Made by a program: the position numbers and the translations under genes. Under the pieces are notes generated by a model. That model was not told where the DNA came from. It made no database searches and saw only the letters and a list, made by a program, of their open reading frames with translations. From Octopus sinensis (taxonomy: Eukaryota), in assembly GCF_006345805.1 (NCBI RefSeq), contig NC_043012.1:46314001-46378000 (forward strand): 64,000 nt of DNA, in the 5' to 3' direction. Each line of letters opens with the position of its first letter. Position 1 is the stretch's first letter. Positions 5,884 through 60,232 of the stretch are shown one piece after another.

Positions 5884-7463
5884 GTAAGATATATATATAT
5901 ATATATATGTATTAGTAGGAAAGATGCCGCAAATATGACATACATAGTGTCATGGTGCACAAATTTCAGAAGACCAGGAATTTTGCTTAGAGAACCATGA
6001 ACTCGTAAACATATATGGATATTTGATTCTTATTTATGTAGTAGGGAAATGGTTATATGAAGTAAGTGAGTTTGTATAAGACATACATCGAAACTAATGC
6101 ATTGCGAAGAAGGAAATGGAAACTGAATGCAATAGTGAAGACAGCAAACAAAGCACCATCTGAATGCTATAAACTATTTAGAATATAGTCCCAAACTCCT
6201 ATCAATATAAAACTAAATGAGAGGCTCTCGTCACGCCCCGTACTTGAAGCCAGCAACATTTGCAGCAAATACCGCGCTACTCTCTTTTAAAACGCTAGAC
6301 ACATGATATATTCCTAAAACCTTATATAAATGCGAGATGGATTCAAGTGTGATTGAATATCAACAAAGAAATATTCTGGAGTCTCAGCACGGTAACTTGC
6401 AAGAATAATTTTTCCATGTTACATTACATGTACAATAATACACCTTGTGCTTAATAAACGTCATTCAAATGGTAGCGTAAATTAATTGAATTTAGATGAC
6501 CACTGATAAGCATATTGTAGTGTAATGTGAATTGAGATATGTATGCTTTTCATATTAATGGCATAATCACTCGAAAGAACATTGAACCGGCTTATTTTTT
6601 GGCTCCTATTAGCAAAAATTGTTTGCTATACAAATATAAACATTTAATGTCCTTGTGTAATCATATATGACCCTTTGCTTACAAATTGTGGCTCAATCTA
6701 TATAATTTTTTCTGCCTACTTTTGCAGGTTATATGAATAAGTTCATAGTATCATTGAGAAAGACAGAAAGGCAGAAATTCAATTAGAAGGTAGCGGGGAG
6801 GAAAAAGACAAAGACCAAGAGAATATGAAGAAATAGAAAAAAGAAAGAAAAGCGAGAACAAGCCCAAACTGAAGAGAAAAGCAAAACAAAATGACATCAG
6901 ATGCAGTATGTGTAAGCTAGTTTTGGAAGACTAAGAGGTATCCTTTGAAGTATCGTTATAGAAGTGTTTCTCGTGCATTGATCAAAATTAATTTTCATCT
7001 TTTTAATTTCTTTTTTTTTTTACAAATCACATACGTTTTCAAATATATGGACATCTCATGGAAATGAAATCAAAGACCGAATTAACATCATCCACGTTTT
7101 GAAATGAATATAAACATATACAGGCACACATGCGCGCGCGCACACCCACAGAAGCACACACACACACACTAATATACTTGGAAATGTGCATAATTGTTAT
7201 GCATTATTTCATGTGCGCGTGTGCATACACGTGCATGTTGACACAAATATACATGGTTTTATAATAGCCTTTCTCTCTCTCACTGTTATATGCTAGTGTA
7301 TATATACATATATATAAAATAAATATAAGAGAGTGGTCACTATATGGCTCACTCTAGCACCAGTTAATCCAAAAGGTTTCAACCACAAAAATACATGTTT
7401 CCCATGAAAGTCAGTACGATTGTTAGCTCACACGGACAGGGCAAATAAAAAATAACAAAAATA

Positions 7464-9147
7464 CAGATTATTTTGGGACAATTGTTTCGCTATTAATGAA
7501 TTAAATGTAATTTTACTTACAAAAAAATCCACTTGTAGCTCGTCAGCCAAAACTATCTGGATGAAATCCACTCAATCACACGCCAGATTTTACCATAACG
7601 ATAAATACGCGTGTGGTTCAATTGATTACATCCGACGTTATAATTTAGATGCCCCAACTAACAGCGCGCCAAACTTTCACGGAAAACAATACTGCATTTA
7701 GAAATAAATGCAGCATAATTATAATTAATAATAAGGGTGAGAGAATTAGATACAATTTAATAGTATATCTATTCAACACCAGTGGCCTGTGCTCCGAGAA
7801 ACCTGGATTATTATAATATTTTATAATATATTATAATATTTTTACAAAATAAATATAGAGAGTGGTCACTATATGGCTCACTCTAGCACCAGTTAATCCA
7901 AAAGGTTTCAACCACAAAAATACATGTTTCCCATGAAAGGCAGTACGATTGTTAGCTCACACGGACAGGGCAAATAAACAATAACAAAAATACAGATTAT
8001 TTTGGGACAATTGTTTCGCTATTAATGAATTAAAGTGTAATTTTACTTACAAAAAAATCCACTTGTAGCTCGTCAGCCAAAACTATCTGGATGAATCCAC
8101 TCAATCACACGCCAGATTTTACCATAACGATAAATACGCGTGTGGTTCAATTGATTACATCCGACGTATAAATTCAGATGCCCCAACTAACAGCGCGCCA
8201 AACTTTCACGGAAAACAAATACTGCATTTAGAAATAAATGCAGCATAATTATAATTAATTAATAAGGGTGAGAGAATTAAATACTAATTAATGTATTCTA
8301 TTCAACACCAAGTGGCCTAGTGCTCCGAGAAACCTGGATTATTATAATATTTTATAATATATTATAATATTTTTACAAAAAATATAAGAGAGTGTCACTA
8401 TATGGCTCACTCTAGCACCAGTTAATCCAAAAGGTATCAACCACAAAAATACCATGTTTCCCATGAAAGTCAGTACGATTGTTAGCTCACACGGACAGGG
8501 CAAATAAAAAATAACAAAATACGATTATTTTGGGACAATTGTTTCGCTATTAATGAATTAAATGTAATTTTACTTACAACAAAAAAATCCCTTGTAGCTC
8601 GTCAGCCAAAACTATCTGGGATAAATCCACTCAATCACACGCCAGATTTTACCATAACGATAAATACGCGTGTGGTTCAATTGATTACATCCGACGTTAT
8701 AATTCAGATGCCCCCACTAACAGCGCGCCAAACTTTCACGGAAAACAATACTGCATTTAGAATAAATGCAGCATAATATAATTAATTAATAAGGGTGAGA
8801 GAATTAAATACTAATTTAATAGTATATATATTCAACACCAAGTGGCCTAGTGCTCCGAGAAACCTGGATTATTATATATTTTTAATATATTATATATTTT
8901 TACAAAATAAATATAAGAGAGTGGTCACTATATGGCTCACTCTAGCACCAGTTAATCCAAAAGGTATCAACCACAAAAATACATGTTTCCCATGAAAGTC
9001 AGTACGATTGTTAGCTCACACGGACAGGGCAAATAAAAAATAACAAAAATACAGATTATTTTGGGACAATTGTTTCGCTATAATGAATTAAATGTAATTT
9101 TACTTACAAAAAAAAACCACTTGTAGCTCGTCAGCCAAAACTATCTG
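7464..9147 (-). ncRNA. Four type I hammerhead ribozymes in the forward units of array 1 (~7464-7559, 7993-8089, 8522-8618, 9052-9147)
   Basis: Each is the reverse complement of the 9625-9719 motif (+ strand reads TTTTGG GAC AATT GTTTC GCTA ... TAGC TCGTCAG CCAAAA). All four cores are intact. Confidence 0.9.
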
Positions 9148-9624
9148 GATGAAATCCACTCAATCACACGCAGATTTTACCATAACGATAAATACGCGTG
9201 TGGTTCAATTGATTACATCCGACGTTATAATTCAGATGCCCCAACTAACAGCGCGCCAAACTTTCACGGAAAACAAATACTGCATTTAGAAATAAATGCA
9301 GCATAATTATAATTAATTAATAAGGGTGAGAGAATTAGATACTAATTTAATAGTATATCTATTCAACACCAAGTGGCCTAGTGCTCCGAGAAACCTGGAT
9401 TATTATAATATTTTATAATATATTATAATATTTTTACAAAATAAATATAACAGAGTGGTCACTATATGGCTCACTCTAGCACCAGTTAATCCAATTGTTT
9501 TCCGTGAAAGTTTGGCGCGCTGTTAGTTGGGGCATCTGAATTATAACGTCGGATGTAATCAATTGAACCACACGCGTATTTATCGTTATGGTAAAATCTG
9601 GCGTGTGATTGAGTGGATTTCATC

Positions 9625-9719
9625 CAGATAGTTTTGGCTGACGAGCTACAAGTGGATTTTTTGTAAGTAAAATTACATTTAATTCATTAATAGCGAAACA
9701 ATTGTCCCAAAATAATCTG
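9625..9719 (+). ncRNA. Type I hammerhead ribozyme (reference copy); predicted GUC cleavage after 9706
   Basis: CAGATAGTTTTGG (9625-9637), CTGACGA (9638-9644), GCTA, 42-nt loop, TAGC (9691-9694), GAAA, C-AATT-G, TC^, CCAAAATAATCTG (9707-9719). Stem I spans 13 positions with one G-U pair and one A.A mismatch; stem II 4 bp; helix III palindrome ACAATTGT. Confidence 0.93.
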
Positions 9720-10009
9720 TATTTTTGTTATTTTTTATTTGCCCTGTCCGTGTGAGCTAACAATCGTACTGACTTTCATGGAAACATGTATTTTTGTGGT
9801 TGAAACCTTTTGGATTAACTGGTGTTAGAGTGAGCCATATAGTGACCACTCTCTTATATTTATTTTGTAAAAATATTATAATATATTATAAAATATTATA
9901 ATAATCCAGGTTTCTCGGAGCACTAGGCCACTTGGTGTTGAATAGATATACTATTAAATTAGTATCTAATTCTCTCACCCTTATTAATTAATTATACATA
10001 TATGTATAT

Positions 10010-10047
<38 letters not shown>

Positions 10048-10061
10048 CTCTTCTACTCTTT

Positions 10062-10200
10062 ACTCTTTTACTCGTTTCAGTCATTTGACTGCGGCCATGC
10101 TGGAGCACCGCCTTAATCGAGAAACTCGACCCCGGGGCTTATTCTTTTGTAAGCCCAGTACTTATTCTATCGGTCTCTTTTGCCGAACAGCTAAGTGACG
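10062..10200 (-). mobile_element. SINE 3' fragment (Octopus tRNA-SINE type)
   Basis: GTTTCAGTCATTTGACTGCGGCCATGCTGGAGCACCGCC...CTTTTGCCGAAC; same family as 15830 and 33925. Confidence 0.75.
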
Positions 10201-10236
10201 TATACATACGTTTCTGTTTCTTCTTATATATATATA

Positions 10237-10276
<40 letters not shown>

Positions 10277-10640
10277 TCAGACAGATAGACAGACATACAG
10301 CATACCTACACATACATATATATGCATGCATACGTTTATACATATATCGCAAAAGTTCTGGTTGGAAGTCTTTTTTACAGGGCTTAGAAAAAACTGAAAG
10401 ACTGCTACAATACATGTGTCAATCTAAGAGGGAATTACATTGAATAAAATCATAATTAACTGTTCCTCCAGCATTTTCTTTTACCCAAAGCCCAGAACAT
10501 TTTAGCTCTCCATCATAAATACATACAAACATACATGCATACACTTATATGTGTTTACACATAAACGCACAAAGGGTCATTATAGAGAAATTTGGCAATG
10601 TTTATGTGTAAATAAATATCTAAAATTGTCTTTTTCTCAG

Positions 10641-14700: not shown

Positions 14701-15829
14701 TAGTAATGGTAATCATATCGAGTATAATGTTTTGAGGGACAGTTGGTAGATTGAGCAGTAATATTGGTGTTTATAGAATGTCTAACACGTGACTTTACTG
14801 ATTATGATTGTGTACCACTTTATGTCGCCCACAATAATCTCAACACGATATTAACTGGTAATGAGATTAAACTCAGGTATTGTAGCGTATTTTAATACTA
14901 ATTATAAATTTATTCGATCATATTTAAGCTACTTTTAGTTCTAATGAAACATACTCATGGCTGTACTTTTGTATAATTTGTATTTTATAAAATTCAATTT
15001 AATAATAATTTGCTGTACCATTAGGTGAGGATATCTTTATATACACGCTTCATTTTGCTTAGTTTTGACCTTAAGAATTCTTAAAATTCTAGTAACATTT
15101 TCTTAATACTCTCCGTATTTTAACACCAATAAAGTAGTGATATAACTTCTACTGAATCTACATGATTTCAATATTTCCACACTATTGACTGAGAGACACG
15201 TTATGATTAACGTTTTCCTTTCATTTATTTTTTGCGGGGTATATTGTTTCTGTTTTTCCTTCTCTAGTCTTTCAATTTGTAACTCAATTACAGCTCACTA
15301 ACTGAGCTCTCTAAATTTCGATATTACCCAACATAAATTTATAAATCTATATCATACTGACATTCATCATTGCCTAAATTAAATTCATTAGTCTAGTATA
15401 AATATTTTTATACCAATACTGTCTGCTCATGTATGTACAGACTTCTATTTGATTTATCTGATTCTGTCTCTATATAAGTATCTATAGTTTATGATTATAG
15501 GCCCCGTGACAATAGATATATCAACACATTCATTGTTTCCGTTTCATTCCACTTCTTATAATTCTCTTCCTGTCTCTCCTCTGAAATTATGCAGTAACCC
15601 TCGTTACTCTACGTTTCTTTAAAATTATGCTCCTTTGATAACTTACTGGATTTCCTTCAATTGAAAGTGATATTCTACTAGTTCTTCAATAATTATTCGG
15701 AGCACTTTAGTCAAGATAACATAAAGAAAGAAATAAGTAATTCTAGGATTTATCAAACATGTCACTCTTTAATATACTAAGCATATAACATAGAGAGTGT
15801 ATGTACTTTTATTCATTTATAATTTGACT

Positions 15830-16010
15830 TGCTTTAGTAATTTGACAGCGGCCATGCAGGAGCACCATATTTGGTCGAGCAAATCAACCCTAAGATTTTA
15901 TCTATGTATGCCTAGTATTTATTCTATCGGTGTCTTTTGCCGAACCGCTAAGTTACGTAAACACACCGGTATCGGTTGTCATGCGATGTTGAGAGAACAA
16001 GCACAAACAC
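15830..16010 (-). mobile_element. SINE 3' fragment
   Basis: GCGGCCATGCAGGAGCACC...ATTCTATCGGTGTCTTTTGCCGAACCGCTAAGTTACG; homologous to 10062-10200. Confidence 0.7.
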
Positions 16011-19664: not shown

Positions 19665-19731
<67 letters not shown>

Positions 19732-19795
19732 ATATATATATATATATATATATATTTAGAAATGGATGCGCGACGTTCAATTAAATAATAATGTA

Positions 19796-20554
<759 letters not shown>

Positions 20555-21607: not shown

Positions 21608-24600
21608 ATGGCTCAACGGACCCCGTTAATCCTCCCACGTAAATTCCAGTTCAAAGCTATTACAGAAGAACCTGAAACACAAAGACACCTCAGGGAGAGA
21701 ATGGCACTGGAAAAAATGAAAATGGAAATAGAACTTCTGAAATTGAGGGCCCAAACGACTGAGGATAAAATAAAATCCACCGATGAAGATATCAACGAAG
21801 AAATTCGCAAAATGACCCAAGGCCCAGATCAAGAGAAGTTCTCCAAACTATGGAAAGAGGACTGTGAAAAAGAAGAACTAAAATCTCTCCAACGCTGGGA
21901 GAAAAGCGCCACTTGGTTCTCAGACTATGAAGCCGTCTTTCAAACAGAGCACGCCTCCAACAACCCTTTCCAGAAAATAAGAAAACCAAAACAACACCCA
22001 AACACCGATACACACCTGTCTAAAAATCGGAACCTTCACTACTATCAAAAAAAAAAAAAAAAAAAAAAAAAAAAGAATACAGGACCTAACCCTAACTCTG
22101 TAAGCAGCCAGCGATACAATATCAGGAATACCCCCACTTCAAGCAGAGAAAGGATAAATCAACACCCACAGCATAGACACTGCAACCTCATCCCCACCCA
22201 AAGGAGTTACCAACGAAATCTTCGTCCCATTAACCGGTTAAAACAACCATGCACAACAAACCCACACCACTTGCAATGATTACCAACGAAGGCCTCCTAG
22301 AACACCACACCCGAATATGGGATATCGGGATGCTCTCCTCAATACTGCTCCAAGAACACACACCATAAATCACAACAGGAGACCCCTAATCAACAAAGAA
22401 CAACTATATACTAGTTACCGTCCCAACCACCGCATTCATTTTTTAGACCCAATACGCAAACACAGAGACACAAGATAGCACCAAACAAGCAGGAGGAACC
22501 AAAAATAATAAAAATTATTAATATAACTCACAAGGAACTAACAGCAAACCAAATAAACATACTTTCAAAGGACTCAAGTTTACACCCACCCCACAACACC
22601 CCAACTACAAAAATGAAAGAAGACATCGCAGAATTCTGCAGAAAATTAAGACTTACTGAGGAGCTATACGATAAATACAACGAGGACGAATCGTTAGCCA
22701 GAAATAGGAGTAACTACACCCCCTCGAAAGGTAAGAATAAACACTTGATGATTTCTGTGACCACATATCAAATTACCCATATCAACATATGCACAAACAA
22801 AAACACAAACCAAACTTCAGCAAAAAAGAATGGGCTGAGTTGAACAAATTAAAACTAGATAAAACAATAACAATCAAAGAGGCCGATAAAGGGAGTGCTG
22901 TTGTCTTAATGGATACGACATTTTACATAACTTTGGTACTTTCTATGCTGGAAGACACAACATACTATGAAAAGGCACAAAACTACAGTCAACAAAAAAT
23001 AATGAGGGAACTAAAATCCATATTAAACCATACAAAGCAGGGCTCACCGACAAAGAATATGATTATATGACCAATTTCACAAGTAAAACTAGCCAATTCT
23101 ACGGTATACCTAAGATCCACAAAAGTGAAAAAATAAGCAACGCATGCAAGATAGCTACAGACAAAATAATTAAAGTCCCTAATCCTAATGACCTCAAATT
23201 GAGACCCATAATAGCAGGTCCCGCATGCGAAACCCACCGCCTCAGTAACCTTTAGACACCCTGTTAAAACCACTCCTCAAACATGTCAAAAGCTATATAA
23301 GGGACGACTTAGATATGCTCAATCACCTACCGAATACTATAAACAAAAACACCATACTGGTATCCTTCGATGTAGTCAACCTCTACTCCAATATCCCCCA
23401 CAAACTAGGACTAGAGGCAATCCAATTCTGGCTAGAGAATCATGCCAACGAACTACCACCCGCATCAAAAAGAATTTGTGATAGAAGGGGTTAAATTCAT
23501 CCTGGAAAATAACTTCTTCGCCTTCAATGACAACTTCTACCGACAAAAATCGGGGACTGCGATGGGTACACGAATGGCCCCCCCTTTGCCAACCTAGTCA
23601 TAGGATACCTAGAGATCAGTCTGTATCGTAAGGTTCTAGAAAGATATGGCAGCCCTTTCTCCATCTACATAGAAAACAACTGGAAGAGATATCTAGATGA
23701 CTGTTTCATCCTTTGGCATAAAAATATAGAAAAACTCATAGAATTCCAGAAAACTTTAAACGGACTGGACGTAAACATCCAATTCACGATGGAATATAGC
23801 CAACAACAACTCCCCTTCCTCGATATCCTCATTAAGAAAGCTAATAATATAATAGAAACAGACATATACTATAAGCCTACAGACTCTAAGCAATATCTTC
23901 CATTCAATTCATGCCACCCCAGACACACCAGGATGAATATCCCCTTCAGTCTAGCAAAAAGGATATGCACTATAGTCTCTAACGCAAACACAGAGACACA
24001 CGACTACAAGAACTAAAAGATACCCTAATCACCAGGAACTATCCACCTTCACTTATTGACAAGTGCATTCAACGTGCCCTTCAACTTAACATCAAGGAAC
24101 TGAGACATCCCAAATCCAAGAAAAACTTACAACCAAAAGCCTTACCATACATCTCCACACACAACCCTCTCAATAACGAAGCCTTCGACACCATCCTCCA
24201 CACATACCCCTCCTAAAAAAAGACCACAGAATGAACACAATCCTCCAAACACACACGATCATAAAAAGCAAAAGACAGCCTAGATCCATGAAAAGTCTCC
24301 TTACACAAGCCCGAATTCACTCTTCAACACAGAAGCCGACAGTAAAAAAATGTGGAAGACCCAATTGCGGATATGCGACTATCTTATTGAGGGATCAGAG
24401 TTCTCCTTCAAACAGGGACAACGGTTTACAGTGAAAAGCAACTTCACATGTGCTTCGGAGAACCTAATATACTCACTAACCTGCTCCGGGTGTCAAGAGC
24501 AGTACATAGGCCAAACAAAAAATGGTTTGCGTAAACGAATGGCCCTGCACAGATCCCAGATAAAAATTCCCCAAAACAGAAAAATAGCTTTTAGCCAACG

Positions 24601-24757
24601 CATAGATACTTGCGCCAACAAAAAAACACCAAACTTCAGAATTTTCCCCCTCTACCAATTTAGGGACGATACAACCTCAAGACAACGAATAAGTAAAGAA
24701 AATCTCTTTATTACAAAATACAAGCCACTTCTTAACGGGTCTACGACAAACAATTAA
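21608..24757 (+). pseudogene. Frameshifted PLE polyprotein: N-terminal extension, reverse transcriptase, GIY-YIG endonuclease
   Basis: Motifs IKEADKGSAVVLMD, FYGIPKIHK, LRPIIAGP, LVSFDVVNLYSNIP, GTAMGTRMAP, WKRYLDDCFILW, LPFLDILI, YYKPTDSKQYLPFNSCHP, and NLIYSLTCSGCQEQYIGQT...RMALH (GIY-YIG). Several frameshifts. Confidence 0.9.
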
Positions 24758-32115: not shown

Positions 32116-32449
32116 ATTCAGAGAAGAATACAGTGTACGTTCAAACACAAAAGAGATACCGAAGAATAGGATATCTGACACGCTAGAAAGAGCAGTTAAA
32201 ACTCCAAGCCACTAAACTAAGAATTTTTAGATGAATATTCTTGCTACCCTAAGATTTTAATTAATGATAAAATGTTTTTTGGCTACTTCTGGAAGGAAAT
32301 CGGCAATTTATTTATTTAGTGCTGGTTGAGTTACCGCATCTGCGCGGTCAATTCGAAAAATTAGAACCTATAGACACGTGGCAGGTTATTTATCGCTCCG
32401 TGCCTGACGGAATATACCTATATACCTATAGTTTTTTGACAGACAGCAG

Positions 32450-33832
32450 CATACTCCCTAATGAACAGAAAGGATGTAAACGTGGATCCTACGGTTGTAA
32501 AGATCAACTACTCATCAATAAGATGATCTTAGATGATTGTCACAAACGACACAAAAACTTATCAATAGCCTGGATAGACTATAAAAAGGCTTTTGGTAGC
32601 CTACCACATAGCTGGATTAAGAAATGCCTATAAATGTATAAGATAGCACCTACTCTGCGAAACTTTTTGTCTGTAAGTATGAGATCATTGAGAACCACAC
32701 TAAATTTTAACAACGACAATGAATCTCTAAATGCTGGTGATGTAAAAATTTCATGTGGCATTTTCTAAGGTGACTCACTATCACCACTCCTCTTCTGTTT
32801 AGCCTTAATACCTCTCTCAAAACTGCTCAATGACGCGCAGTACGGATATAAAATATTTGATAAAAATATAAATCATCTCATTTACATGGATGATTTAAAG
32901 CTCTTTGCAAAAAATGACCAACAACTCAAGGGCTTACTAGCGATTGTCAAACAATTCAATGATGACATCAAAATGCAATTTGGCCTCGATAAGTGTGCAA
33001 AAGCTACCTTATCAAGGGAAAAATGACAGAAACATCTAACGTTAACCTACCAACAAGAAACTACCAGGCCAACATATTAAAGATCAGCAGCAGTCCAACT
33101 TGTCGTGTAAGCCAGCAACAAAATGAAACCATTGATCATGTGGTCTCCAATTGCAGTCTTCTAGTGCCTACAGAGTATCTCAACAGGCACGATAGAGCTG
33201 CACAATATATTTACTGGGTAATCTGCAAAAACCTGGATTTGCCCCATGAAAAAAAACTGGTGGGAACACAAACCACCCCCAGTGCTTGAAAATGACCTCA
33301 TTTCACTCCTCTGGAACTTCACCATTCAAACTGGCAGAAAGATAGATGCAAATAGTCCAGACATCATATTGAAAGACTTCAAACAAAGAACATGCCTCCT
33401 CACTGTCCCAATCGATATAAACGTATCTGTCAAGACCTACCAAAAACTGAGCAAATATAAAGATCTTGAATTAGAAATCAGCAAAATGTGGAACCTGAAG
33501 ACTAAAACAATACCTGTTGTCATAGGTGCCCTGGGAATGATAGCAAAAGGGGCTGACAGCTACCTAACTCAGATACCAGGAAACCAAAAAATGGCAGAAA
33601 TTCAAAAGATAGTGCTCAGGGGAACTGCTCATATCCTACGCAAAATACTCTCTATGTAATCTCAAGGTTTAAAACAAACATTTTTTCTTTTTTAGACATC
33701 CACCAGTACAACACAAAAAACAACCAAATATATGGCACACTAGGCATAACAACAACGTGAACTTCCAACCTGTTGTCTCCTGAGGACCCTGGGTGAGACT
33801 TGGAGCCAACTTGTAGAAATATAAAGCAAAAG
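32450..33832 (+). mobile_element. R4/Dong-type LINE, internally deleted (RT, CCHC, RLE, 3' UTR, (AAT)n tail)
   Basis: EQKGCKRGSYGCKDQL, AWIDYKKAF, GDSLSPLLF, HLIYMDDLKLF, CR...ETIDHVVSNC, RHD, PDII, KLSKYKDL, PVVIGALG; followed by (AAT)n at ~33840-33922. Confidence 0.9.
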
Positions 33833-33924: not shown

Positions 33925-34220
33925 TAGCTTGCTTACCAACCACATGGTTCTGGGTTCAGTCTCACTGCGTGGCAACTTGGGCGAGTGTCTTCTACAATAG
34001 CCTCGGGCCGACCAAAGCCTTGTGAGTAGATTTGGTAGACGGAAACTGAAAGAAGTCCGTCGTATATATATATATATGTGTGTGTGTGTCGTGTGTGTGT
34101 GTGTGTGTGTGCGTATGTGTGTGTGTCTGTATTTGTCCCCCAACATCGCTTGACAACAGATGCTGGTGTGTTTACGTCCCCGTACCTTAGCAGTTCGGCA
34201 AAAGAGAACGATAGATTAAG
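33925..34220 (+). mobile_element. tRNA-derived SINE with internal (TA)/(GT) microsatellite
   Basis: GGTTCTGGGTTCAGTCTCACTGCGTGGCAACTTGGGCGAGTG...GGAAACTGAAAGAAG...TTCGGCAAAAGAGAACGATAG; complementary to 10062 and 15830. Confidence 0.8.
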
Positions 34221-34799: not shown

Positions 34800-35885
34800 A
34801 TTTTGACTAGGTCGATACTTTCTTGTGAAATGCATCTCCTTGGTAATCCGTTCATTTTGGCTAGCATTGTCTTTTGAATTTGCATAATGGAAAAGTTGAG
34901 AATTTGTGAAATTTGTTGGATGCACATTCATCGATATGCTGGCTGAGAGGTATTTTCCTGTATCCCTGGTTGTCTAAGTTCTTGTGTATTTCGTTTAAAT
35001 ACTCGTTGGATCGTATTGTCGATTAAGGTTTGTGGGTAATTCCTATTGATGAGTGTGGTTTTCAATTCCTGGAATCGTGTGTAACGGTGTTTTCATCTGA
35101 TACTTTTGTGCATATTCTTTTGGCTAAACAAAATGGGATATTCCATCCTGGTATGTCTCGGGTGGCTAGAATCAAATGGCAGGTACTGTTTCGAGTCCGT
35201 GGGTTTGTAATAAATATCTGTCTCTGTTTTGTTCCCGACTTTCTTAATAAGGATATCTAAAAACGGTAGTTGTTCCTGGTTGTACTCTATTGTAAATTGG
35301 AGGTTTTCATTTATTCAATTTAGAAGTGTTTGGAATTCGTTAAGTTTTTTAATACATTCATTCAAGAGGATGATGCAGTCATCGTGATATTTTTTTTGGT
35401 TGCAATTCTTTTGAATGTAGATTGAAAAGTAATTTACATATTTCTTTGGTATATTCTAATTTCCAGATAGCCCATTACCAGGTTCCCAAAGCAAGATGCA
35501 GCCTGTGTTCCTATTGCTGTCCCCAATTTTTGTCGGAAGTAGTCATTGTTAAATATAAAATATTGTTTTCTGGGATAAATCTTAGTCCTATTATGAGTTC
35601 TTTTTTAATGCGAGACAGGGGTTCATAGGTATAATTGTCCGACCAGAATGTGAAAGCTTTTATTCCTAGGGTGTGGGGAATATTTGAATAAAGTTTGACT
35701 ACGTCGAAGTACACTAGCAGTGCTTTCTCATTGGCCGTTTTGGGTCGCTGGTTGAGCATGTCCAGATTATCTCTTATATAACGCTTGATGTGTTTGAAGA
35801 AGGGCTTCAATAGAGTGTCCAGGAAGTAGCTGAGGCGGTGGGGTTTGCATGCTGGACCTGCTATTATTGGGTTTAGTTTCATGTC
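34800..35885 (-). mobile_element. Penelope-like element fragment (RT), same family as 21130-25590, with deletions
   Basis: KLNPIIAGPACKPHRLSYFLDTLLKPFFKHIKRYIRDNLDMLN...FDVVKLYSNIP closely parallels ~23200-23400. Confidence 0.85.
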
Positions 35886-38834: not shown

Positions 38835-39655
38835 ATCATTCAGTAATTCTATTTTTATAGCGTGCTTTCACTTCACTACCGAGTGCAGCTCTGTGTGCCT
38901 TAGGTATGTGCTGTGATTTGTTGTGATGCTCTGATGGTTATTGTATGGAAAGTGTTCTGCGTAGGATGTGTGCAGTGCCTAGTAGTGCAATTTTCTGTAT
39001 GTTATATGTGTTTGTAAGTCCTGGTGTTTTTGTTATGTATTTGTCTGAATATTTTTTTTATCATGCCTAATGCACTTACTATGATAGGAATTGTTTCTGT
39101 TTTTAGATTCCACATTCTGGTTACCTCTATTTCCAGGTCTTTGTATTTTGAAAGTTTCTCCATTTCTTTTAGAGACACGTTGTCATCTGCCGGTATTGAT
39201 ACATCAATTAGAAAGCATTTTTTTCTTCATGATCTCTGACAACTATATCTGGTATGTTGGCCTTAATTTCTCTGTTTGTGTGTATCGGCATATCCCAGAG
39301 TATGGTTGCTTTCTCGTTTTCTGTGACCTTTTCTGGTGTATGCCTATACCATCTTTTTTCTGTTGTTATTCCATAATGTTTGCATAGCTTCCAGTGTATG
39401 TAGGTTCCAACTTTGTCATGTCTGTGAATATATTCCTTCTTAGCTAGGACTGGGCAGCCAGAGATAATATGATTTATTGTTTCTTGTCCATCTCCAAATA
39501 TTCTGCAGTTACTTGTTATATTTCTTTTCACTACATGTTTTTGGTAATTTCTGGTTGGGAGGCTTTGGTCTCGTGCTGCAATTAAAAATCCCTCTGGCTC
39601 TGCTTTGAGTCCTGAGCTTCTCAACCCTTGCTGGGATTTTTCTTTGTCTATATTT
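38835..39655 (-). mobile_element. R4/Dong-type LINE 3' part (CCHC plus RLE), between two (ATT)n tracts
   Basis: GLKAEPEGFLIAARDQSLPTRNY...CRIFGDGQETINHIISGCPVLAKKEYIHRHDKVG...PDIVVRD; tail (ATT)n at ~38750-38830. Confidence 0.9.
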
Positions 39656-39686
39656 ATTACTATTATTATCATTATTATTATTATTA

Positions 39687-42630: not shown

Positions 42631-42690
<60 letters not shown>

Positions 42691-42884
42691 GATAGATATA
42701 TAGATATAATATATACATATATATGGTATATATATTATATACATACATTATATATATGTATATATATATACATACATATATATATATATGTATGTATATA
42801 TATATACATATATATATATGTATGTATATATATATACACATATATATGTATATATATATTATATCTAATATCTATCTATCTATT

Positions 42885-42934
<50 letters not shown>

Positions 42935-43243
42935 TATATACATACATATATATATATATATTATATATAATTAATTAATACGGGTGAGAGAATTAGATAC
43001 TAATTTAATAGTATATTTATTCAACACCAAGTGGCCTAGTGCTACGAGAAACCTAGATTATTATAATTATTTATAACATATTATAATATTTTTACAAAAT
43101 AAATATAAGAGAGTGGTCACTATATTGCACACTCTAGCACCAGTTAATCCAAAAGGTTTCAACCACGAAAATACATGTTTCCCATGAAAGTCAGTACGAC
43201 TGTTAGCTCACACGGACAGGGCAAATAAAAAACAACAAAAATA

Positions 43244-44394
43244 CAGATTATTTTGGACAATTGTTTCGCTATTAATGAATTAAATGTAATATTACTTCAA
43301 AAAAATCCATTTGTAGCTCGTCAGCCAAGACTATCTGGATGAAATCCACTCAATCACACGCCAGATTTTACCATAACGATAATACGCGTGTGGTTCAATT
43401 GATTACAACCGACGTTATAATTCAAATGCCCCAACCAACAGCGCGCCAACTTTCACGGAAAACAATACAGCATTTAGAATATAATGCAGCATAATTATAA
43501 TTAATTAATAAGGGTGAGAGAATTTATACTAATTTAATAGTATATTTATTCAACACCAAGTGCCTAGTGCTACGAGAAACCTGGATTATTATAATATTTT
43601 ATAACATATTATAATATTTTTACAAAATAAATATAAGAGAGTGGTCACTATTTGCTCACTCTAGCACCAGTTAATCCAAAAGGTTTCAACCACGAAAATA
43701 CATGTTTCCCATGAAAGTCAGTACGACTGTTAGCTCGCACGGACAGGGCAAATAAAAAACAACAAAAATACAGATTATTTTGGGACAATTGTTTCGCTAT
43801 TAATGAATTAAATGTAATATTACTTACAAAAAATCCATTTGTAGCTCGTCAGCCAAGACTATCTGGATGAAATCCACTCAATCACACGCCAGATTTTACC
43901 ATAACGATAATACGCGTGTGGTTCAATTGATTACATCCGACGTTATAATTCAAATGCCCCAACCAACAGCGCGCCAAACTTCACGGAAAACAAATACAGC
44001 ATTTAGAAATAAATGCAGCATAATATATTAATTAATAAGGGTGAGAGAATTAGATACTAATTTAATAGTATATTTATTCAACACCAAGTGGCCTAGTGCT
44101 ACGAGAAACCTGGATTATTATAATATTTTATAACATATAATATTTTTACAAAATAAATATAAGAGAGTGGTCACTATATTGCTCACTCTAGCACCAGTTA
44201 ATCCAAAAGGTTTCAACCACGAAAATACATGTTTCCCATGAAAATCAGTACGACTGTTAGCTCACACGGACAGGGCAAATAAAAAACAACAAAAATACAG
44301 ATTATTTTGGGACAATTGTTTCGCTATTAATGAATTAAATGTAATATTACTTACAAAAAAAATCCATTTGTAGCTCGTCAGCCAAGACTATCTG
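43244..44394 (-). ncRNA. Three type I hammerheads in the forward units of array 2 (~43244-43337, 43771-43865, 44298-44394)
   Basis: Cores intact. The first copy lacks one G of TTTTGGGAC, so stem I is one bp shorter or there is a sequencing error. Confidence 0.88.
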
Positions 44395-44646
44395 GATGAA
44401 ATCCACTCAATCACACGCCAGATTTTACCATAACGATAAATACGCGTGTGGTTCAATGATTACATCCGACGTTATAATTCAAATGCCCCAACCAACAGCG
44501 CGCCAAACTTTCACGGAAACCAATACAGCATTTTTGGCGCGCTGTTGGTTGGGGCATTTGAATTATAACGTCGGATGTAATCAATTGGACCACACGCGTA
44601 TTTATCGTTATGGTAAAATCTGGCGTGTGATTGAGTGGATTTCATC

Positions 44647-46559
44647 CAGATAGTCTTGGCTGACGAGCTACAAATGGATTTTTTTGTAAGTAATATTACA
44701 TTTAATTCATTAATAGCGAAACAATTGTCCCAAAATAATCTGTATTTTTGTTATTTTTTACTTGCCCTGTCCGTGTGAGCTAACAGTCGTACTGGCTTTC
44801 ATGGGAACAGGTATTTTCGTGGTTGAAACCTTTTGGATTAACTGGTGCTAGAGTGAGCAATATAGTGACCACTCTCTTATATTTATTTTGTAAAAATATT
44901 ATAATATGTTATAAAATATTATAATAATCCAGGTTTCTCGTAGCACTAGGCCACTTGGTGTTGAATAAATATACTATTAAATAGTATCTAATTCTCTCAC
45001 CCTTATTAATTAATTATAATTATGCTGCATTTATTTCTAAATGCTGTATTTGTTTTCCGTGAAAGTTTGGCGCGCTGTTGGTTGGGGCATTTGAATTATA
45101 ACGTCGGATGTAATCAATTGGACCACACGCGTATTTATCGTTATGTAAAATCTGGCGTGTGATTGAGTGGATTTCATCCAGATAGTCTTGGCTGACGAGC
45201 TACAAATGGATTTTTTTGTAAGTAATATTACATTAATTCATTAATAGCGAAACAATTGTCCCAAAATAATCTGTATTTTTGTTATTTTTTACTTGCCCTG
45301 TCCGTGTGAGCTAACAGTCGTACTGGCTTCATGGGAAACAGTATTTTCGTGGTTGAAACCTTTTGGATTAACTGGTGCTAGAGTGAGCAATATAGTGACC
45401 ACTCTCTTATATTTCTAATGCTGTTTTGTTTTCGTGAAAGTTTGGCGCGCTGTTGGTTGGGGCATTTGAATTATAACGTCGGATGTAATCAATTGAACCA
45501 CACGCGTATTTATCGTTATGGTAAAATCTGGCGTGTGATTGAGTGGATTTCATCCAGATAGTCTTGGCTGACGAGCTACAAATGGATTTTTTGTAAGTAA
45601 TATTACATTTAATTCATTAATAGCGAAACAATTGTCCCAAAATAATCTGTATTTTTGTTGTTTTTTATTTGCCCTGTCCGTGTGAGCTAACAGTCGTACT
45701 GACTTTCATGGGAAACATGTATTTTCGTGGTTGAAACCTTTTGGATTAACTGGTGCTAGGTGAGCAATATAGTGACCACTCTCTTATATTTATTTTGTAA
45801 AAATATTATAATATGTTATAAAATTTATAATAATCCAGGTTTCTCGTAGCACTAGGCCACTTGGTGTTGAATAAATATACTATTAAATTAGTATCTAATT
45901 CTCTCACCCTTATTAATTAATTATAATTATGCTGCATTTATTTCTAAATGCTGTATTTGTTTTCCGTGAAAGTTTGGCGCGCTGTTGGTGGGGCATTTGA
46001 ATTATAACGTCGGATGTAATCATTGGACCACACGCGTATTTATCGTTATGGTAAAATCTGGCGTGTGATTGAGTGGATTTCATCCAGATAGTCTTGGCTG
46101 ACGAGCTACAAATGGATTTTTTGTAAGTAATATTACATTTAATTCATTAATAGCGAACAATTGTCCCAAAATAATCTGTATTTTTGTTATTTTTTACTTG
46201 CCCTGTCCGTGTGAGCTAACAGTCGTACTGGCTTTCATGGGAAACAGGTATTTTCGTGGTTGAAACCTTTTGGATTAACTGGTGCTAGAGTGAGCAATAT
46301 AGTGACCACTCTCTTATATTTCTAAATGCTGTATTTGTTTTCCGTGAAAGTTTGGCGCGCTGTTGGTTGGGGCATTTGAATTATAACGTCGGATGTAATC
46401 AATTGAACCACACGCGTATTTATCGTTATGGTAAAATCTGGCGTGTGATTGAGTGGATTTCATCCAGATAGTCTTGGCTGACGAGCTACAAATGGATTTT
46501 TTGTAAGTAATATTACATTTAATTCATTAATAGCGAAACAATTGTCCCAAAATAATCTG
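44647..46559 (+). ncRNA. Five type I hammerheads in the inverted units of array 2 (44647-44742, 45179-45273, 45555-45649, 46085-46178, 46465-46559)
   Basis: CAGATAGTCTTGG CTGACGA GCTA...TAGC GAAA CAATTGTC^CCAAAATAATCTG; cleavage after 44729, 45260, 45636, (46165) and 46546. The fourth copy reads GAAC, missing one A of GAAAC. Confidence 0.9.
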
Positions 46560-46727
46560 TATTTTTGTTGTTTTTTATTTGCCCTGTCCGTGTGAGCTAA
46601 CAGTCGTACTGACTTTCATGGGAAACATGTATTTTCGTGGTTGAAACCTTTTGGATTAACTGGTGCTAGAGTGAGCAATATAGTGACCACTCTCTTATAT
46701 TTATTATATTATATATATATATATATA

Positions 46728-46773
<46 letters not shown>

Positions 46774-46786
46774 CATACACACATAT

Positions 46787-46828
<42 letters not shown>

Positions 46829-58943: not shown

Positions 58944-60232
58944 CGAGGGGCGTTCAATAAGTAATGCCTCTGACCCACTTCCCATAACAGTAGAGCAACG
59001 AAACTTGGCACAATTATTAGTCTTTTTCTACATAGAAACCACCCAGAGTTACGCATTTCTCCCATCGTTTGATGCAGCTCTGGAGACCGTTTTTGTAGAA
59101 GACCCCAGCCTGGTCCTCCAACCACGACGTGACTTCAGAAATCAAGGCTGCATCATCTGGGAAACGCCTTCCTTTCAAAAACAACTTCATGGCTGGGAAG
59201 AGGTGAAAATCAGAGGGTGCAAGGTCAAGAGAGTAGGGAGGATTGGGGAGGAGTTCATAGCGGCACGCCTGTGCTTCTGATCGGGCGACACACGAGTTGT
59301 GGACCGGAGCGTTGTCCTGCAGGAGGAAGATGCCTTTGCTGATCTTGCCCCGCCTCTTGATTTTGATAGCTTCTCTTAATTTCTTCAAAAGTGAAGCATA
59401 ATAGGCTCCTGTAATTGTGGTACCCTTTGCCAGGAAATCTGTCATCACTACTCCGTCCTGGTCCCAGAAGACTGTGAGCATGACCTTGCCAACGGAGGGC
59501 TGTACCCTTGCCTTCTTTAGAGGAGGTGAGTCACGGTGCTTCCACTGCATTGACTGGGCTTTGGTCTCTGGATCATAGTGATGGACCCAGGTTTCATCCT
59601 GTGTAGTCTTTTGAAAAATTTTGACTCATCTTCTTGGCACATCTCCAAATTCATCCTCGAGCACTCGACGCGTTCTTGCTTCTGGAAAGGTTTGACCAAC
59701 CTGGTACTCCATCTGGCAGACACCTTTTGCATATGCAAATGGTTATGAATTATAGTTTCCACAGACCCGGTACTAATCTTGACCTCATGGGCTATTTAGC
59801 GTATAGTTATGCGTCGATCTTCCAAAATGGCAGCATCAAATTGACGGACAGATGCCTCATCAATGGCAGAAGGGGGGCGACCAGATCTGGGATCTGTTTC
59901 CACAGAGTTCCGACCATGTTTGAATTCACGATGCCAGCGTTTTACAAGGTCATATGATGGGGCATCATCACCATGAGTTACTTTCATTTCATCAAAAGTC
60001 TCCCCTGATGTGCGTCCATTCAAATACAAAAACCGGATCACTGCTCGACACTCAACAGGCTCCATTTCACACTTGACTCAGTTCAAACACCTGTAAATCA
60101 GAAACCACATTTAGTTCAGAGCTGTAATTTGCCAGTTTATCTATGGAGATATAAATGTTTGCACATGCACAATTTCAGCTAGATCAAACAACTGCAAGTG
60201 GGTCAGGGACATTACTTATTGAACGTCCCTCG
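58944..60232 (-). mobile_element. Full-length (~1.29 kb) mariner transposon with a frameshifted transposase
   Basis: TIRs CGAGGGGCGTTCAATAAGTAATG and CATTACTTATTGAACGTCCCTCG; TA on both sides (58942-58943, 60233-60234). ORF pieces 59796-60065, 59517-59762 and 59017-59550 include QDNAPVH and PPYSLDLAPSDFHLFP. Confidence 0.95.

What the first reader, a model, noticed from the sequence alone, without database searches (positions are those of the whole stretch)
7316..9996. A ~530-bp tandem repeat in which every unit carries a type I hammerhead ribozyme (retrozyme-like array)
Seen: each unit has CTGACGA-GCTA...TAGC-GAAA-C-AATT-GTC^ closed by a 13-position stem I (reference 9625-9719), and all 5 cores here are intact. 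Established: tandem units with type I hammerheads characterise newt satellite 2, Schistosoma Sm-alpha and metazoan non-LTR retrozymes, whose multimeric transcripts self-cleave to monomers that can circularise; published units are mostly ~150-400 nt. Inference: this is a large (~530-nt) cephalopod retrozyme family that would otherwise be labelled a satellite. I cannot tell whether it has been described.
Basis: partly seen in the sequence, partly recalled or inferred. Interest (0 to 1): 0.92.

Follow-up and report, generated by a model that had tools for sequence, protein, structure and literature searches.

The report
Hammerhead-ribozyme retrozyme arrays in an octopus-like genome
The ~530-bp repeat really does carry a hammerhead self-cleaving RNA motif in every unit and fits the known class of animal "retrozymes"; its two copies here are each built as two opposed chains inserted into TA microsatellites, which hints at how such elements are copied.

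Summary
Five intact type I hammerhead (HHR) motifs lie in 7313-10004 at a 528-531 bp period. None is expected by chance. Rfam Hammerhead_1 aligns over its full length at 30.1 bits, below the gathering score of 34, because helix II carries a 38-nt insert.

- The array is not one head-to-tail run. Four units lie on the minus strand and one on the plus strand, joined head-to-head at 9494|9495.
- A second, independent array at 42966-46710 has the same design and eight more motifs, one with a 1-nt core deletion.
- All four outer ends abut (TA)n tracts and fall at the same two AU-rich monomer positions (~163 and ~293).

The unit is non-coding, 33% GC and strongly self-paired (z -4 to -8). Helix III is 2 bp with a palindromic AAUU loop, so the ribozyme probably acts as a dimer.

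Best reading: a non-LTR retrozyme family in an octopod-like genome, inserted by twin, both-strand target-primed reverse transcription as described for Penelope-like elements. Relics of such elements lie in the window.

Cleavage, circular RNA and the mobilising enzyme are untested. It is a new member of a known kind, of moderate interest.

The parts
7313..9494 (-). Array 1, minus-sense chain. It starts 5'-truncated at monomer position 104 (window 9494), runs leftwards through 4 cleavage sites (9065, 8534, 8006, 7477) and ends at monomer position ~163 (window 7313) against a short TA tract.
   Evidence: the repeat finder; monomer alignment; blastn of the monomer against the window
9495..10004 (+). 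Array 1, plus-sense chain. It starts 5'-truncated at monomer position 321, has one cleavage site (after 9706) and ends at monomer position ~293-295 against (TA)n.
9625..9719 (+). Reference HHR domain. Parts in order: stem I 5' strand, CUGACGA, helix II (GCUA/UAGC plus an extension hairpin of about 40 nt), GAAA, helix III (A-U, C-G, loop AAUU), GUC^, stem I 3' strand.
   Evidence: Rfam RF00163 30.1 bits, E 3.7e-6; RNAfold z -4.5; constrained folds
7464..7559 (-). HHR domain, core intact; cleavage between 7477 and 7476.
7993..8089 (-). HHR domain, core intact; cleavage at 8006.
8523..8618 (-). HHR domain, core intact; cleavage at 8534. The distal 2 pairs of stem I are lost and the helix II extension is altered.
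9052..9147 (-). HHR domain, core intact; cleavage at 9065.
42966..44533 (-). Array 2, minus-sense chain. It starts at monomer position 310 (window 44533), has 3 cleavage sites (44311, 43784, 43256) and ends at monomer position ~289-293 (window 42966) against (AT)n. HHR domains: 44298-44394, 43771-43865, 43244-43337.
44534..46710 (+). Array 2, plus-sense chain. It starts at monomer position ~337, has 5 cleavage sites (after 44729, 45260, 45636, 46165, 46546), contains units of 531, 376, 529 and 381 nt, and ends at monomer position ~163-165 against (TA)n. HHR domains: 44647-44742, 45179-45273, 45555-45649, 46085-46178, 46465-46559.
46098..46165 (+). The only defective core: GAAC in place of GAAAC, a 1-nt deletion in the GAAA box. 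This may be an assembly error.
   Evidence: single-base indels are frequent among the copies
45261..45636 (+). Short (376-nt) unit lacking monomer positions 156-302. The deletion lies at a TATTT microhomology. A second short unit is at 46166-46546 (381 nt).
   Evidence: alignment; blastn
10005..10047 (.). (TA)n tract abutting the right end of array 1. The left end abuts a short imperfect TA tract at about 7296-7318.
42632..42965 (.). (AT)n microsatellite abutting the left end of array 2.
46710..46824 (.). (TA)n microsatellite abutting the right end of array 2.
22789..24757 (+). Context, not part of the repeat: a frameshifted relic of a Penelope-like element. [quoted passage not shown] A second RT fragment lies at 35511-35882 (-).
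   Evidence: Pfam GIY-YIG E 2.4e-5; fragments 57-78% identical to each other; full-length relatives of 712-773 aa carry RVT_1 plus a C-terminal GIY-YIG

Best explanation
The 531-nt unit, with a 376-381-nt deletion form, is a non-coding, non-LTR retrozyme-type element of an octopod-like genome.

Inferred life cycle, following the published model for animal retrozymes:
1. Multimeric transcripts are cut after GUC by the type I hammerhead in each unit.
2. Helix III is only A-U and C-G closed by the palindromic loop AAUU. Cutting therefore most likely needs two neighbouring hammerheads that share an 8-bp intermolecular helix III (a double hammerhead).
3. The unit-length RNAs would be circularised by a host RNA ligase.

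Shown here at the DNA level:
- Each of the two arrays consists of two 5'-truncated multimer chains joined head-to-head, with their RNA-sense 3' ends pointing outward.
- The four outer ends fall at only two AU-rich monomer positions (~163 and ~293).
- All four ends abut (TA)n.

Inferred from that: each array is one insertion made by target-primed reverse transcription from both strands of a nicked (TA)n target (twin priming) on multimeric or circular retrozyme RNA. The most likely enzyme is a Penelope-like element RT/GIY-YIG protein, which in vitro cuts and extends both strands of AT-rich DNA and starts reverse transcription inside the RNA.
For: Motif:
- 13 copies, 12 of them intact; 0 expected by chance.
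- Full-length alignment to Rfam Hammerhead_1, E 3.7e-6.
- G10.1-C11.1 pair, GUC cleavage triplet and type I topology are present.
- 97.3% of cells are paired in the proposed structure, against 26-40% in slid controls.

Dimer:
- The helix III hairpin has no stability on its own. The ACAAUUGU self-duplex gives -6.4 kcal/mol.
- The double-hammerhead fold (-56.0) equals twice the monomer MFE. The single active fold is 5.6 kcal/mol worse than the monomer MFE.
- Published metazoan type I HHRs have the same 1-2 bp helix III with a palindromic loop and act as dimers (PMC4209133).

Retrozyme features:
- No ORF longer than 66 aa.
- GC 0.33-0.37; circular folds have z -4.2 to -7.8 and are 66-69% paired, with stem I and helix II formed.
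- Two loci with unrelated flanks.

Insertion signature:
- The inversion junctions differ between arrays (104|321 against 310|337), carry 1-3 nt microhomology and are not symmetric, so this is neither a segmental duplication nor a fold-back artefact.
- Chance that both 3' ends of array 2 fall within 6 nt of those of array 1 is about 0.0012.
- TA tracts make up 3.3% of the window.
- Both chains of array 1 carry all of the array-1-specific bases they cover.

Literature:
- PLE insertions are partial tandems plus an adjacent inverted 5'-truncated copy, with a microsatellite target bias ((TA)n in the Naiad clade) (PMC8557442).
- A Poseidon PLE protein cleaves and extends both strands, prefers AT-rich DNA and initiates internally (PMC11167929).
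- Retrozymes are proposed to be PLE-dependent (PMC7229834; preprint 10.64898/2026.07.22.740005).
- PLE relics are present in the window.
Against: - No RNA evidence of any kind is available here.
- The Rfam score is 30.1 against a gathering score of 34, and the motif is not detected at window scale.
- There are no compensatory changes. The 3 fixed differences in the HHR domain (3 of about 96 nt) are no rarer than elsewhere (8 of about 438 nt), and one of them creates an A.C mismatch in stem I of array 2.
- A competing GACGA/UUGUC pairing is favoured by the energy model.
- The antisense strand folds almost as well as the sense strand (z -5.7).
- The unit has no similarity to the PLE relics in the window, and those relics have no HHR nearby.
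- The two 3' termini are about 130 nt apart, not the 30-40-nt 'tail' described for PLEs.
- The plus chain of array 2 mixes variant and deleted units. One monomeric circle copied round and round cannot explain that.
- The shared termini lie in TA-like sequence, so DNA-level microhomology with (TA)n could mimic them.
- There are only two loci.
Confidence: 0.68

Rival explanations
1. This is an ordinary satellite or minisatellite that carries a hammerhead relic. The arrays grew and were rearranged at the DNA level by unequal crossing-over, inversion and microhomology-mediated recombination with neighbouring (TA)n tracts. RNA plays no part today.
For: - Array 2 shows a mosaic of unit variants, with full and deleted units alternating, which is typical of unequal exchange.
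- The HHR domain is no better conserved than the rest of the unit, and there is no covariation.
- The termini lie in TA-like monomer sequence that could recombine with (TA)n or seed it.
- The 2026 preprint itself invokes local amplification.
Against: - 12 of 13 cores are intact.
- Two loci with unrelated flanks independently show the same unusual design: head-to-head, 5'-truncated in the centre, the same two termini outward, with different junctions.
- The class of repeat (type I HHR in each unit) has been shown to be transcribed and circularised in a coral, a mussel and the axolotl (PMC7229834).
Confidence: 0.17
2. It is a retrozyme as above, but it is mobilised by a LINE (for example an RTE or CR1 type, both abundant in octopus genomes) through classical twin priming, not by a Penelope-like element.
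For: - Twin priming is established for L1 (established knowledge, not tested here).
- LINE-type RT relics (zf-RVT) lie in the window.
- A SINE-like element also sits between (TA)n tracts next to array 1, so TA tracts may be general insertion sites.
- The unit has no sequence similarity to the PLE relics in the window.
Against: - Type I HHRs, tandem-plus-inverted insertions and microsatellite targets are hallmarks of PLEs.
- Both-strand extension has been shown for a PLE protein.
- Retrozymes co-occur with PLEs and resemble their pLTRs in Xenopus.
Confidence: 0.12
3. It is a chance motif or an assembly artefact, for example palindromic chimeric long reads.
For: - Many single-base indels among the copies suggest a noisy assembly.
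- Inverted duplications can be read artefacts.
Against: - No motifs are found in shuffled or random sequence, and the Rfam alignment covers the full model.
- The arms are not symmetric about the junctions (104|321 and 310|337).
- Two separate loci carry array-specific diagnostic bases.
Confidence: 0.03

Closest known systems
Metazoan non-LTR retrozymes (Acropora millepora, Mytilus galloprovincialis, Ambystoma mexicanum; Cervera & de la Pena 2020, PMC7229834)
   Same: - Short non-coding tandem units, each with a type I HHR.
- Low GC; no LTR.
- The predicted circle is highly self-paired and leaves the HHR free.
- A mollusc example is already known (mussel, 350-390 bp).
   Different: - The unit is 531 nt, against the 170-400 nt first reported. 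It is within the 51-972 bp range of the 2026 preprint, and a 376-381-nt form also exists here.
- Helix II carries a hairpin extension of about 40 nt, which drops the Rfam score below gathering.
- The arrays are head-to-head pairs of chains.
- No RNA data are available here.
- I found no paper describing HHR repeats in cephalopods.
Newt satellite 2 / amphibian HHR_Amex1
   Same: - Type I HHR in each unit of a tandem repeat.
- Very weak helix III capped by a palindromic tetraloop, so activity is as a dimer.
   Different: - Unrelated sequence.
- Helix I (13 positions) and helix II are much longer here.
- The canonical loop 1 and loop 2 are replaced by internal loops.
Penelope-like element pLTRs and their insertion architecture (PMC8557442, PMC4209133, PMC11167929)
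   Same: - Type I HHR.
- Partial tandems with an adjacent inverted 5'-truncated copy.
- AT-rich or (TA)n targets.
- More than one reverse-transcription start site.
   Different: - No RT/EN ORF between the repeats.
- The HHR is of the canonical kind (helix III present, no extra base between positions 9 and 10.1, long helix I), not the minimal PLE kind.
- The termini are about 130 nt apart, not 30-40.
- No similarity to the PLE relics in the window.
L1 twin priming
   Same: Two cDNAs primed from the two target strands give an inversion, with both RNA-3' ends outward and a microhomology junction in the middle.
   Different: - No poly(A).
- The template is a repeat or a circle.
- The enzyme class is unknown.
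Plant LTR retrozymes
   Same: HHR-bounded non-autonomous retroelement that yields circular RNA.
   Different: Plant elements have type III HHRs inside LTRs, together with PBS and PPT. Here the HHR is type I, and no LTRs were found; PBS and PPT were not searched.

Membership tests
Hammerhead ribozyme, type I (Rfam RF00163) | Conserved core CUGANGA ... GAAA ... UH with a non-G at position 17 | tested here: met
   12 of 13 copies have CUGACGA, GAAA and GUC. One copy has GAAC.
Hammerhead ribozyme, type I (Rfam RF00163) | Three helices around the core with helix I open (type I), and a G10.1-C11.1 pair at the base of helix II | tested here: met
   - Helix I has 12 pairs in 13 positions.
- Helix II is GCUA/UAGC plus an extension.
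- Helix III is A-U and C-G with loop AAUU.
- 97.3% of cells are paired, against 26-40% in slid controls.
Hammerhead ribozyme, type I (Rfam RF00163) | Covariance-model score at or above the curated gathering score | tested here: not met
   The score is 30.1 bits against 34, E 3.7e-6 in a 111-nt search, over model positions 1-45 with a 38-nt insert in loop 2. There is no hit in the window-scale searches.
Hammerhead ribozyme, type I (Rfam RF00163) | Helices supported by compensatory changes | tested here: inconclusive
   No pair changes on both sides. The copies are 94-99% alike.
Hammerhead ribozyme, type I (Rfam RF00163) | Site-specific self-cleavage; tertiary contact between helices I and II | not testable with these tools
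   This needs transcription and cleavage assays. The internal loops (CA/AA in helix II, A.A in helix I) sit where loops 2 and 1 would be, but that is inference only.
Metazoan non-LTR retrozyme | Short tandem units, each with a type I HHR | tested here: met
   Period 528-531 bp, or 376-381 bp for the short form, with one motif per unit.
Metazoan non-LTR retrozyme | Non-coding, no LTRs, GC below 50% | tested here: met
   The longest ORF is 66 aa and is not shared between units. The arrays end directly in (TA)n. GC is 0.33-0.37. PBS and PPT motifs were not searched specifically.
Metazoan non-LTR retrozyme | Dispersed at many loci as a mobile element | tested here: inconclusive
   There are two loci 33 kb apart with unrelated flanks and different internal junctions. 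Genome-wide copy number cannot be obtained with these tools.
Metazoan non-LTR retrozyme | Predicted circular RNA is stable and highly self-paired, with the HHR free to fold | tested here: met
   Circular MFE z is -4.2 to -7.8, 66-69% of bases are paired, and stem I and helix II are present in the MFE. The antisense strand is also structured.
Metazoan non-LTR retrozyme | Expressed as unit-length linear and circular RNA | not testable with these tools
   No transcriptome is available.
Penelope-like-element-type insertion | Partial tandem with an adjacent inverted 5'-truncated copy | tested here: met
   Both arrays are head-to-head with truncated 5' ends, at monomer positions 104|321 and 310|337.
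Penelope-like-element-type insertion | AT-rich or microsatellite target | tested here: met
   All four ends abut TA tracts, which make up 3.3% of the window. The left tract of array 1 is only about 20 bp.
Penelope-like-element-type insertion | Optional 30-40-bp tail between two adjacent RT start sites | tested here: not met
   There are two recurrent termini, but they are about 130 nt apart (positions ~163 and ~293).
Penelope-like-element-type insertion | The unit is similar to a PLE pLTR | tested here: inconclusive
   There is no similarity to the two PLE relics in the window, and no HHR lies beside them.
Plant LTR retrozyme | Type III HHR within LTRs, plus PBS and PPT | tested here: not met
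   The topology is type I and there are no LTRs.

The most novel reading that the evidence does not exclude
The two arrays are direct genomic footprints of both-strand target-primed reverse transcription of retrozyme RNA into (TA)n microsatellites. There are two defined internal start sites on the RNA, and the two cDNAs are joined head-to-head. If this design recurs genome-wide, it would be the first structural signature that identifies the machinery mobilising animal retrozymes (Penelope-like RT/GIY-YIG). A 2020 review says the repeats themselves give no clue to this (PMC7761336). A by-product would be that read-through transcripts of such arrays fold into 0.5-1.5-kb dsRNA hairpins.
Probability: 0.35. 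Interest if true: 0.65.

Novelty: new member of a known kind. Interest (0 to 1): 0.45.

Why it matters
- It would add cephalopods to the animals that carry hammerhead retrozymes. It would also show that standard annotation (Rfam at gathering threshold, repeat finders limited to periods of 500 or less) misses them and labels them as satellite.
- The main point is that which retrotransposon copies animal retrozymes is still open. Insertions with defined 3' termini, inverted twin chains and (TA)n targets make that question testable by a simple genome-wide census in octopus assemblies, and by biochemistry with a PLE protein.
- The long helix II and the palindromic helix III give a natural test case for dimer-only hammerhead activity.

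Tried and rejected
- **Rfam at window scale.** Rfam at gathering on the whole window, and at E<=10 on 3.4 kb, gave no hammerhead. The motif was recovered only in a 111-nt search.
- **Rfam on fetched loci.** Rfam at gathering on the two fetched loci also missed a canonical-looking HHR at L122:373-418. So a null result at that setting means little.
- **Collection scans, exact pattern.** Scans of metagenome, prokaryotic-genome and viral collections with the exact pattern gave 0 hits.
- **Collection scan, looser pattern.** This gave 124 matches, none with helix I or II pairing, so all are chance.
- **Covariation.** Uninformative.
- **Conservation of the HHR domain against the rest.** No difference.
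- **Similarity of the unit to the PLE relics in the window.** None.
- **Other checks.** No HHR outside the arrays with a relaxed descriptor. No tRNA-like part.
- **Annotating the PLE RT pieces.** Pfam, NCBIfam and PDB searches gave nothing, and two word-indexed protein searches gave almost nothing. The exhaustive HMMER search plus Pfam on full-length relatives settled it.
- **Exact-protein look-ups.** Look-ups of window ORFs, to identify the source assembly or other arrays, found nothing on record. There is no homologue of an array ORF.
- **Full-text search for the sequences.** No paper.
- **Explanations rejected.**
  - Segmental duplication: the flanks are unrelated and the junctions differ.
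  - Snap-back or missed-adapter palindrome: the arms are not symmetric about the junction.
  - Rolling-circle copying of one monomeric circle for the plus chain of array 2: the units differ and alternate between full and deleted forms.
Full report
**1. Observation**

The stretch 7000-10400 was read directly. The pattern CTGANGA-GCTA-N(30-60)-TAGC-GAAAC-AATT-GTC occurs 12 times in the window, against 0 in 100 dinucleotide-preserving shuffles. Five of these lie inside the reported coordinates. A relaxed regular expression finds a 13th copy (46098-46165) whose GAAA box has lost one A.

A generic type I descriptor was also run. It required stem I of at least 5 perfect pairs, helix II of at least 3, helix III of at least 1, and UH. 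It finds only the five motifs of the first array, and none in 100 Markov-1 random windows. The second array fails that strict setting only because of one A.C mismatch at the fifth pair of stem I.

Unit spacing is 528-531 bp. Tandem Repeats Finder could not report it because its longest period is 500.

The copies fall in two arrays:

| Array | Window span | Minus-strand motifs (cleavage site) | Plus-strand motifs (cleavage after) |
|---|---|---|---|
| 1 | 7313-10004 | 7477, 8006, 8534, 9065 | 9706 |
| 2 | 42966-46710 | 43256, 43784, 44311 | 44729, 45260, 45636, 46165 (defective core), 46546 |

**2. Rfam**

The whole window at gathering threshold gives nothing. A 3.4-kb stretch at E<=10 also gives no hammerhead. 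When only 9615-9725 is searched, RF00163 Hammerhead_1 aligns 9632-9712 over model positions 1-45. The score is 30.1 bits against a gathering score of 34, with E 3.7e-6 for that small search. The alignment puts a 38-nt insertion in loop 2.

So the miss is explained by the speed filters and the insertion penalty, not by a bad core. Formally, the curated threshold is still not reached.

**3. The ribozyme**

On the sense strand the domain reads as follows:
- **Stem I:** 13 positions, made of 12 pairs including one G.U, plus one A.A mismatch.
- **Core, first half:** CUGACGA.
- **Helix II:** G10.1-C11.1, then C-G, U-A and A-U. A CA/AA internal loop follows, then an 8-bp extension and a 5-bp tip.
- **Core, second half:** GAAA.
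- **Helix III:** A15.1-U16.1 and C-G, closed by AAUU.
- **Cleavage site:** C17, cleavage after GUC.

RNAfold recovers stem I and the extended helix II (z -4.5). In the 13-copy alignment, 97.3% of cells are paired, against 26-40% when partners are slid. No pair changes on both sides, so covariation says nothing.

Helix III has no stability as a hairpin. ACAAUUGU is an 8-nt palindrome whose self-duplex gives -6.4 kcal/mol. Three energies matter:
- The single active fold is 5.6 kcal/mol worse than the MFE, which contains a competing GACGA/UUGUC pairing.
- The double-hammerhead fold of two copies is -56.0 kcal/mol.
- Twice the monomer MFE is also -56.0 kcal/mol.

The literature describes canonical metazoan type I hammerheads in the same terms: helix III of 1-2 bp capped by a 2-4-nt palindromic loop, active as dimers in tandem transcripts (PMC4209133; PMC7229834). 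This hammerhead lacks the extra base between positions 9 and 10.1 that marks the minimal PLE hammerheads. It is therefore of the canonical, retrozyme kind.

**4. The unit**

Cut at GUC^, the monomer is 527-531 nt. A short form of 376-381 nt lacks positions 156-302, a deletion at a TATTT microhomology.
- It has no ORF above 66 aa, and the small ORFs differ from unit to unit.
- It has no tRNA-like part.
- GC is 0.33-0.37.
- Circular folds of four monomers have z -4.2 to -7.8 and are 66-69% paired. The hammerhead domain (stem I plus helix II) forms as a separate arm.
- The linear sense fold has z -6.1. The antisense fold has z -5.7, so the structure is not specific to one strand.

**5. Architecture**

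Chain coordinates below are in monomer coordinates, where position 1 is the first base after the cut.

| Array | Chain | Starts (monomer pos.; window) | Cleavage sites crossed | Ends (monomer pos.; window) |
|---|---|---|---|---|
| 1 | minus | 104; 9494 | 4 | ~163; 7313 |
| 1 | plus | 321; 9495 | 1 | ~293-295; 10004 |
| 2 | minus | 310; 44533 | 3 | ~289-293; 42966 |
| 2 | plus | ~337; 44534 | 5 | ~163-165; ~46710 |

Each array is therefore two 5'-truncated chains joined head-to-head by 1-3 nt of microhomology, with the RNA-sense 3' ends pointing outward.

The four outer ends use only two sites:
- Site A lies after ...CUCUCUUAUAUUUAUU.
- Site B lies after ...UUAAUUAAUUAUA.

The two sites agree to within 0-2 nt between arrays, and each array has one end at each site. 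Two further numbers bear on chance:
- For uniformly placed ends, the probability of this coincidence is about 0.0012. It is larger if ends are restricted to TA-like sequence.
- All four ends abut TA tracts, which cover 3.3% of the window. The tract at the left of array 1 is only about 20 bp.

The arrays are independent:
- The flanks are unrelated.
- The junctions differ.
- Eleven fixed differences separate the arrays.
- The plus chain of array 1 carries the array-1 bases at every diagnostic site it covers.

Segmental duplication is therefore excluded. So is a symmetric fold-back or missed-adapter artefact, because the arms are not symmetric about the junctions. A single event per array is the simplest reading.

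**6. Mechanism**

Shown: the motif, the fold, the non-coding unit and the array design.

Inferred, in three layers:
- **From the published retrozyme model** (PMC7229834): multimer transcription, hammerhead cleavage, ligase-mediated circularisation and reverse transcription.
- **From the design:** priming from both strands of a nicked (TA)n target at two AU-rich sites of the RNA, with the two cDNAs joined in the middle, as in twin priming.
- **From the literature, on the enzyme:**
  - Penelope-like elements insert as partial tandems with an adjacent inverted 5'-truncated copy, and are biased toward microsatellite targets ((TA)n in the Naiad clade) (PMC8557442).
  - A purified Poseidon protein cuts and extends both strands, prefers AT-rich DNA and starts reverse transcription inside the RNA at two sites (PMC11167929).
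  - Retrozymes co-occur with PLEs and resemble their pLTRs in Xenopus (preprint 10.64898/2026.07.22.740005).

The window itself holds two relics of such elements:
- One is at about 22789-24757 (+). It has a Pfam GIY-YIG hit (E 2.4e-5) and, by eye, a DKG motif, RT motifs and a CX4CxxC linker of the Neptune type.
- The other is at 35511-35882 (-).
- The two are 57-78% identical.
- Their full-length relatives of 712-773 aa carry RVT_1 followed by a C-terminal GIY-YIG.

Points against the PLE link:
- The unit has no similarity to these relics.
- No HHR lies beside the relics.
- The termini are about 130 nt apart rather than 30-40.
- A SINE-like element also sits between TA tracts next to array 1, so TA tracts may attract other retroelements too.

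The plus chain of array 2 mixes two sequence variants and alternates full and deleted units. It was therefore not copied from one monomeric circle. A heterogeneous multimeric template, or later unequal exchange, is needed.

**7. Source organism**

The closest relative of the RT fragment (67% identity) is encoded on CM046618.1 of GCA_001194135.2. A published paper names that assembly as Octopus bimaculoides (PMC10700109). The 20.7-kb locus around it shares a SINE-like repeat with the window at 86-88% identity and PLE sequence at 72-75%.

Penelope elements and SINEs are abundant in octopus genomes (PMC8967140). An octopod or close relative is therefore likely. The species was not determined, and look-ups of window ORFs found no record.

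**8. Comparison with what is known, and novelty**

The class is known: type I hammerheads in short tandem non-coding repeats, including in a mollusc (mussel). The reported length range now spans 51-972 bp, so 531 nt is not exceptional.

No paper in the searchable library links hammerhead ribozymes or retrozymes to a cephalopod repeat, and none prints these sequences. [quoted passage not shown] 2017. Prior description cannot be excluded.

I file this as a new member of a known kind. Two points of added value are the long helix II, which hides it from Rfam, and the twin-chain insertions with defined termini in (TA)n. Those insertions bear on the open question of who mobilises animal retrozymes.

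**9. Caveats**
- The evidence rests on two loci and includes no RNA data.
- The copies differ by about as many single-base indels (54 columns) as substitutions (58). This suggests assembly noise, so the one defective core may not be real.
- Three of the four chain 5' ends fall within monomer positions 310-337 (p about 0.03). This is unexplained. It could be a template 5' end or a reverse-transcription stop.

Noticed in passing
window 42966-46710: A second array of the same family, outside the reported coordinates. It has 3 minus-strand and 5 plus-strand hammerheads joined head-to-head at 44533|44534, and is flanked by (AT)n at 42632-42965 and (TA)n at 46710-46824.
   Followed up: yes
window 45261-45636 and 46166-46546: Short units (376 and 381 nt) lacking monomer positions 156-302 alternate with full units. 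The 5' parts of the units in this chain fall into two sequence variants in a mosaic order.
   Followed up: partly
window 46098-46165 (+): One hammerhead has GAAC in place of GAAAC. The copies differ by many single-base indels in homopolymer runs, so this may be an assembly error rather than a dead copy.
   Followed up: partly
window 9494|9495, 44533|44534: Three of the four chain 5' ends lie within monomer positions 310-337 (p about 0.03). This could be a template 5' end, a transcription start or a reverse-transcription stop.
   Followed up: partly
window ~22789-24757 (+) and 35511-35882 (-): [quoted passage not shown] A CX4CxxC linker, read by eye, suggests the Neptune type. No hammerhead was found beside them.
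   Followed up: partly
window 10048-10212: A SINE-like element sits between two (TA)n tracts directly to the right of array 1. Weaker copies lie at 15823-15963 and 34186-34220. It is 86-88% identical to a repeat in an Octopus bimaculoides locus (L121:19281-19436 and 19691-19822).
   Followed up: partly
window 59017-59550 (-): A mariner-type transposase relic (Pfam Transposase_1, E 2.6e-22).
   Followed up: no
window 39208-39672 (-), 32993-33289 (+), 32319-32633 (+): LINE-type reverse-transcriptase relics, with weak zf-RVT and RVT_1 matches.
   Followed up: no
L122:373-418 (+): A canonical-looking type I hammerhead (gcgtca-CTGATGA-GTCT..AGAC-GAAAC-GCGC-GTC-tgacgt, with a palindromic helix III) lies 9.6 kb upstream of a PLE-like gene in assembly GCA_905397895.1 (organism not checked). 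Rfam at gathering threshold did not report it.
   Followed up: partly
window 7313-10004 and 42966-46710: Because the two chains of each array are inverted copies, a read-through transcript would fold into a 0.5-1.5-kb double-stranded RNA hairpin. That could be a source of small RNAs against the family.
   Followed up: no
whole window: (TA)n tracts are very dense: 53 tracts covering 3.3% of the 64 kb.
   Followed up: partly
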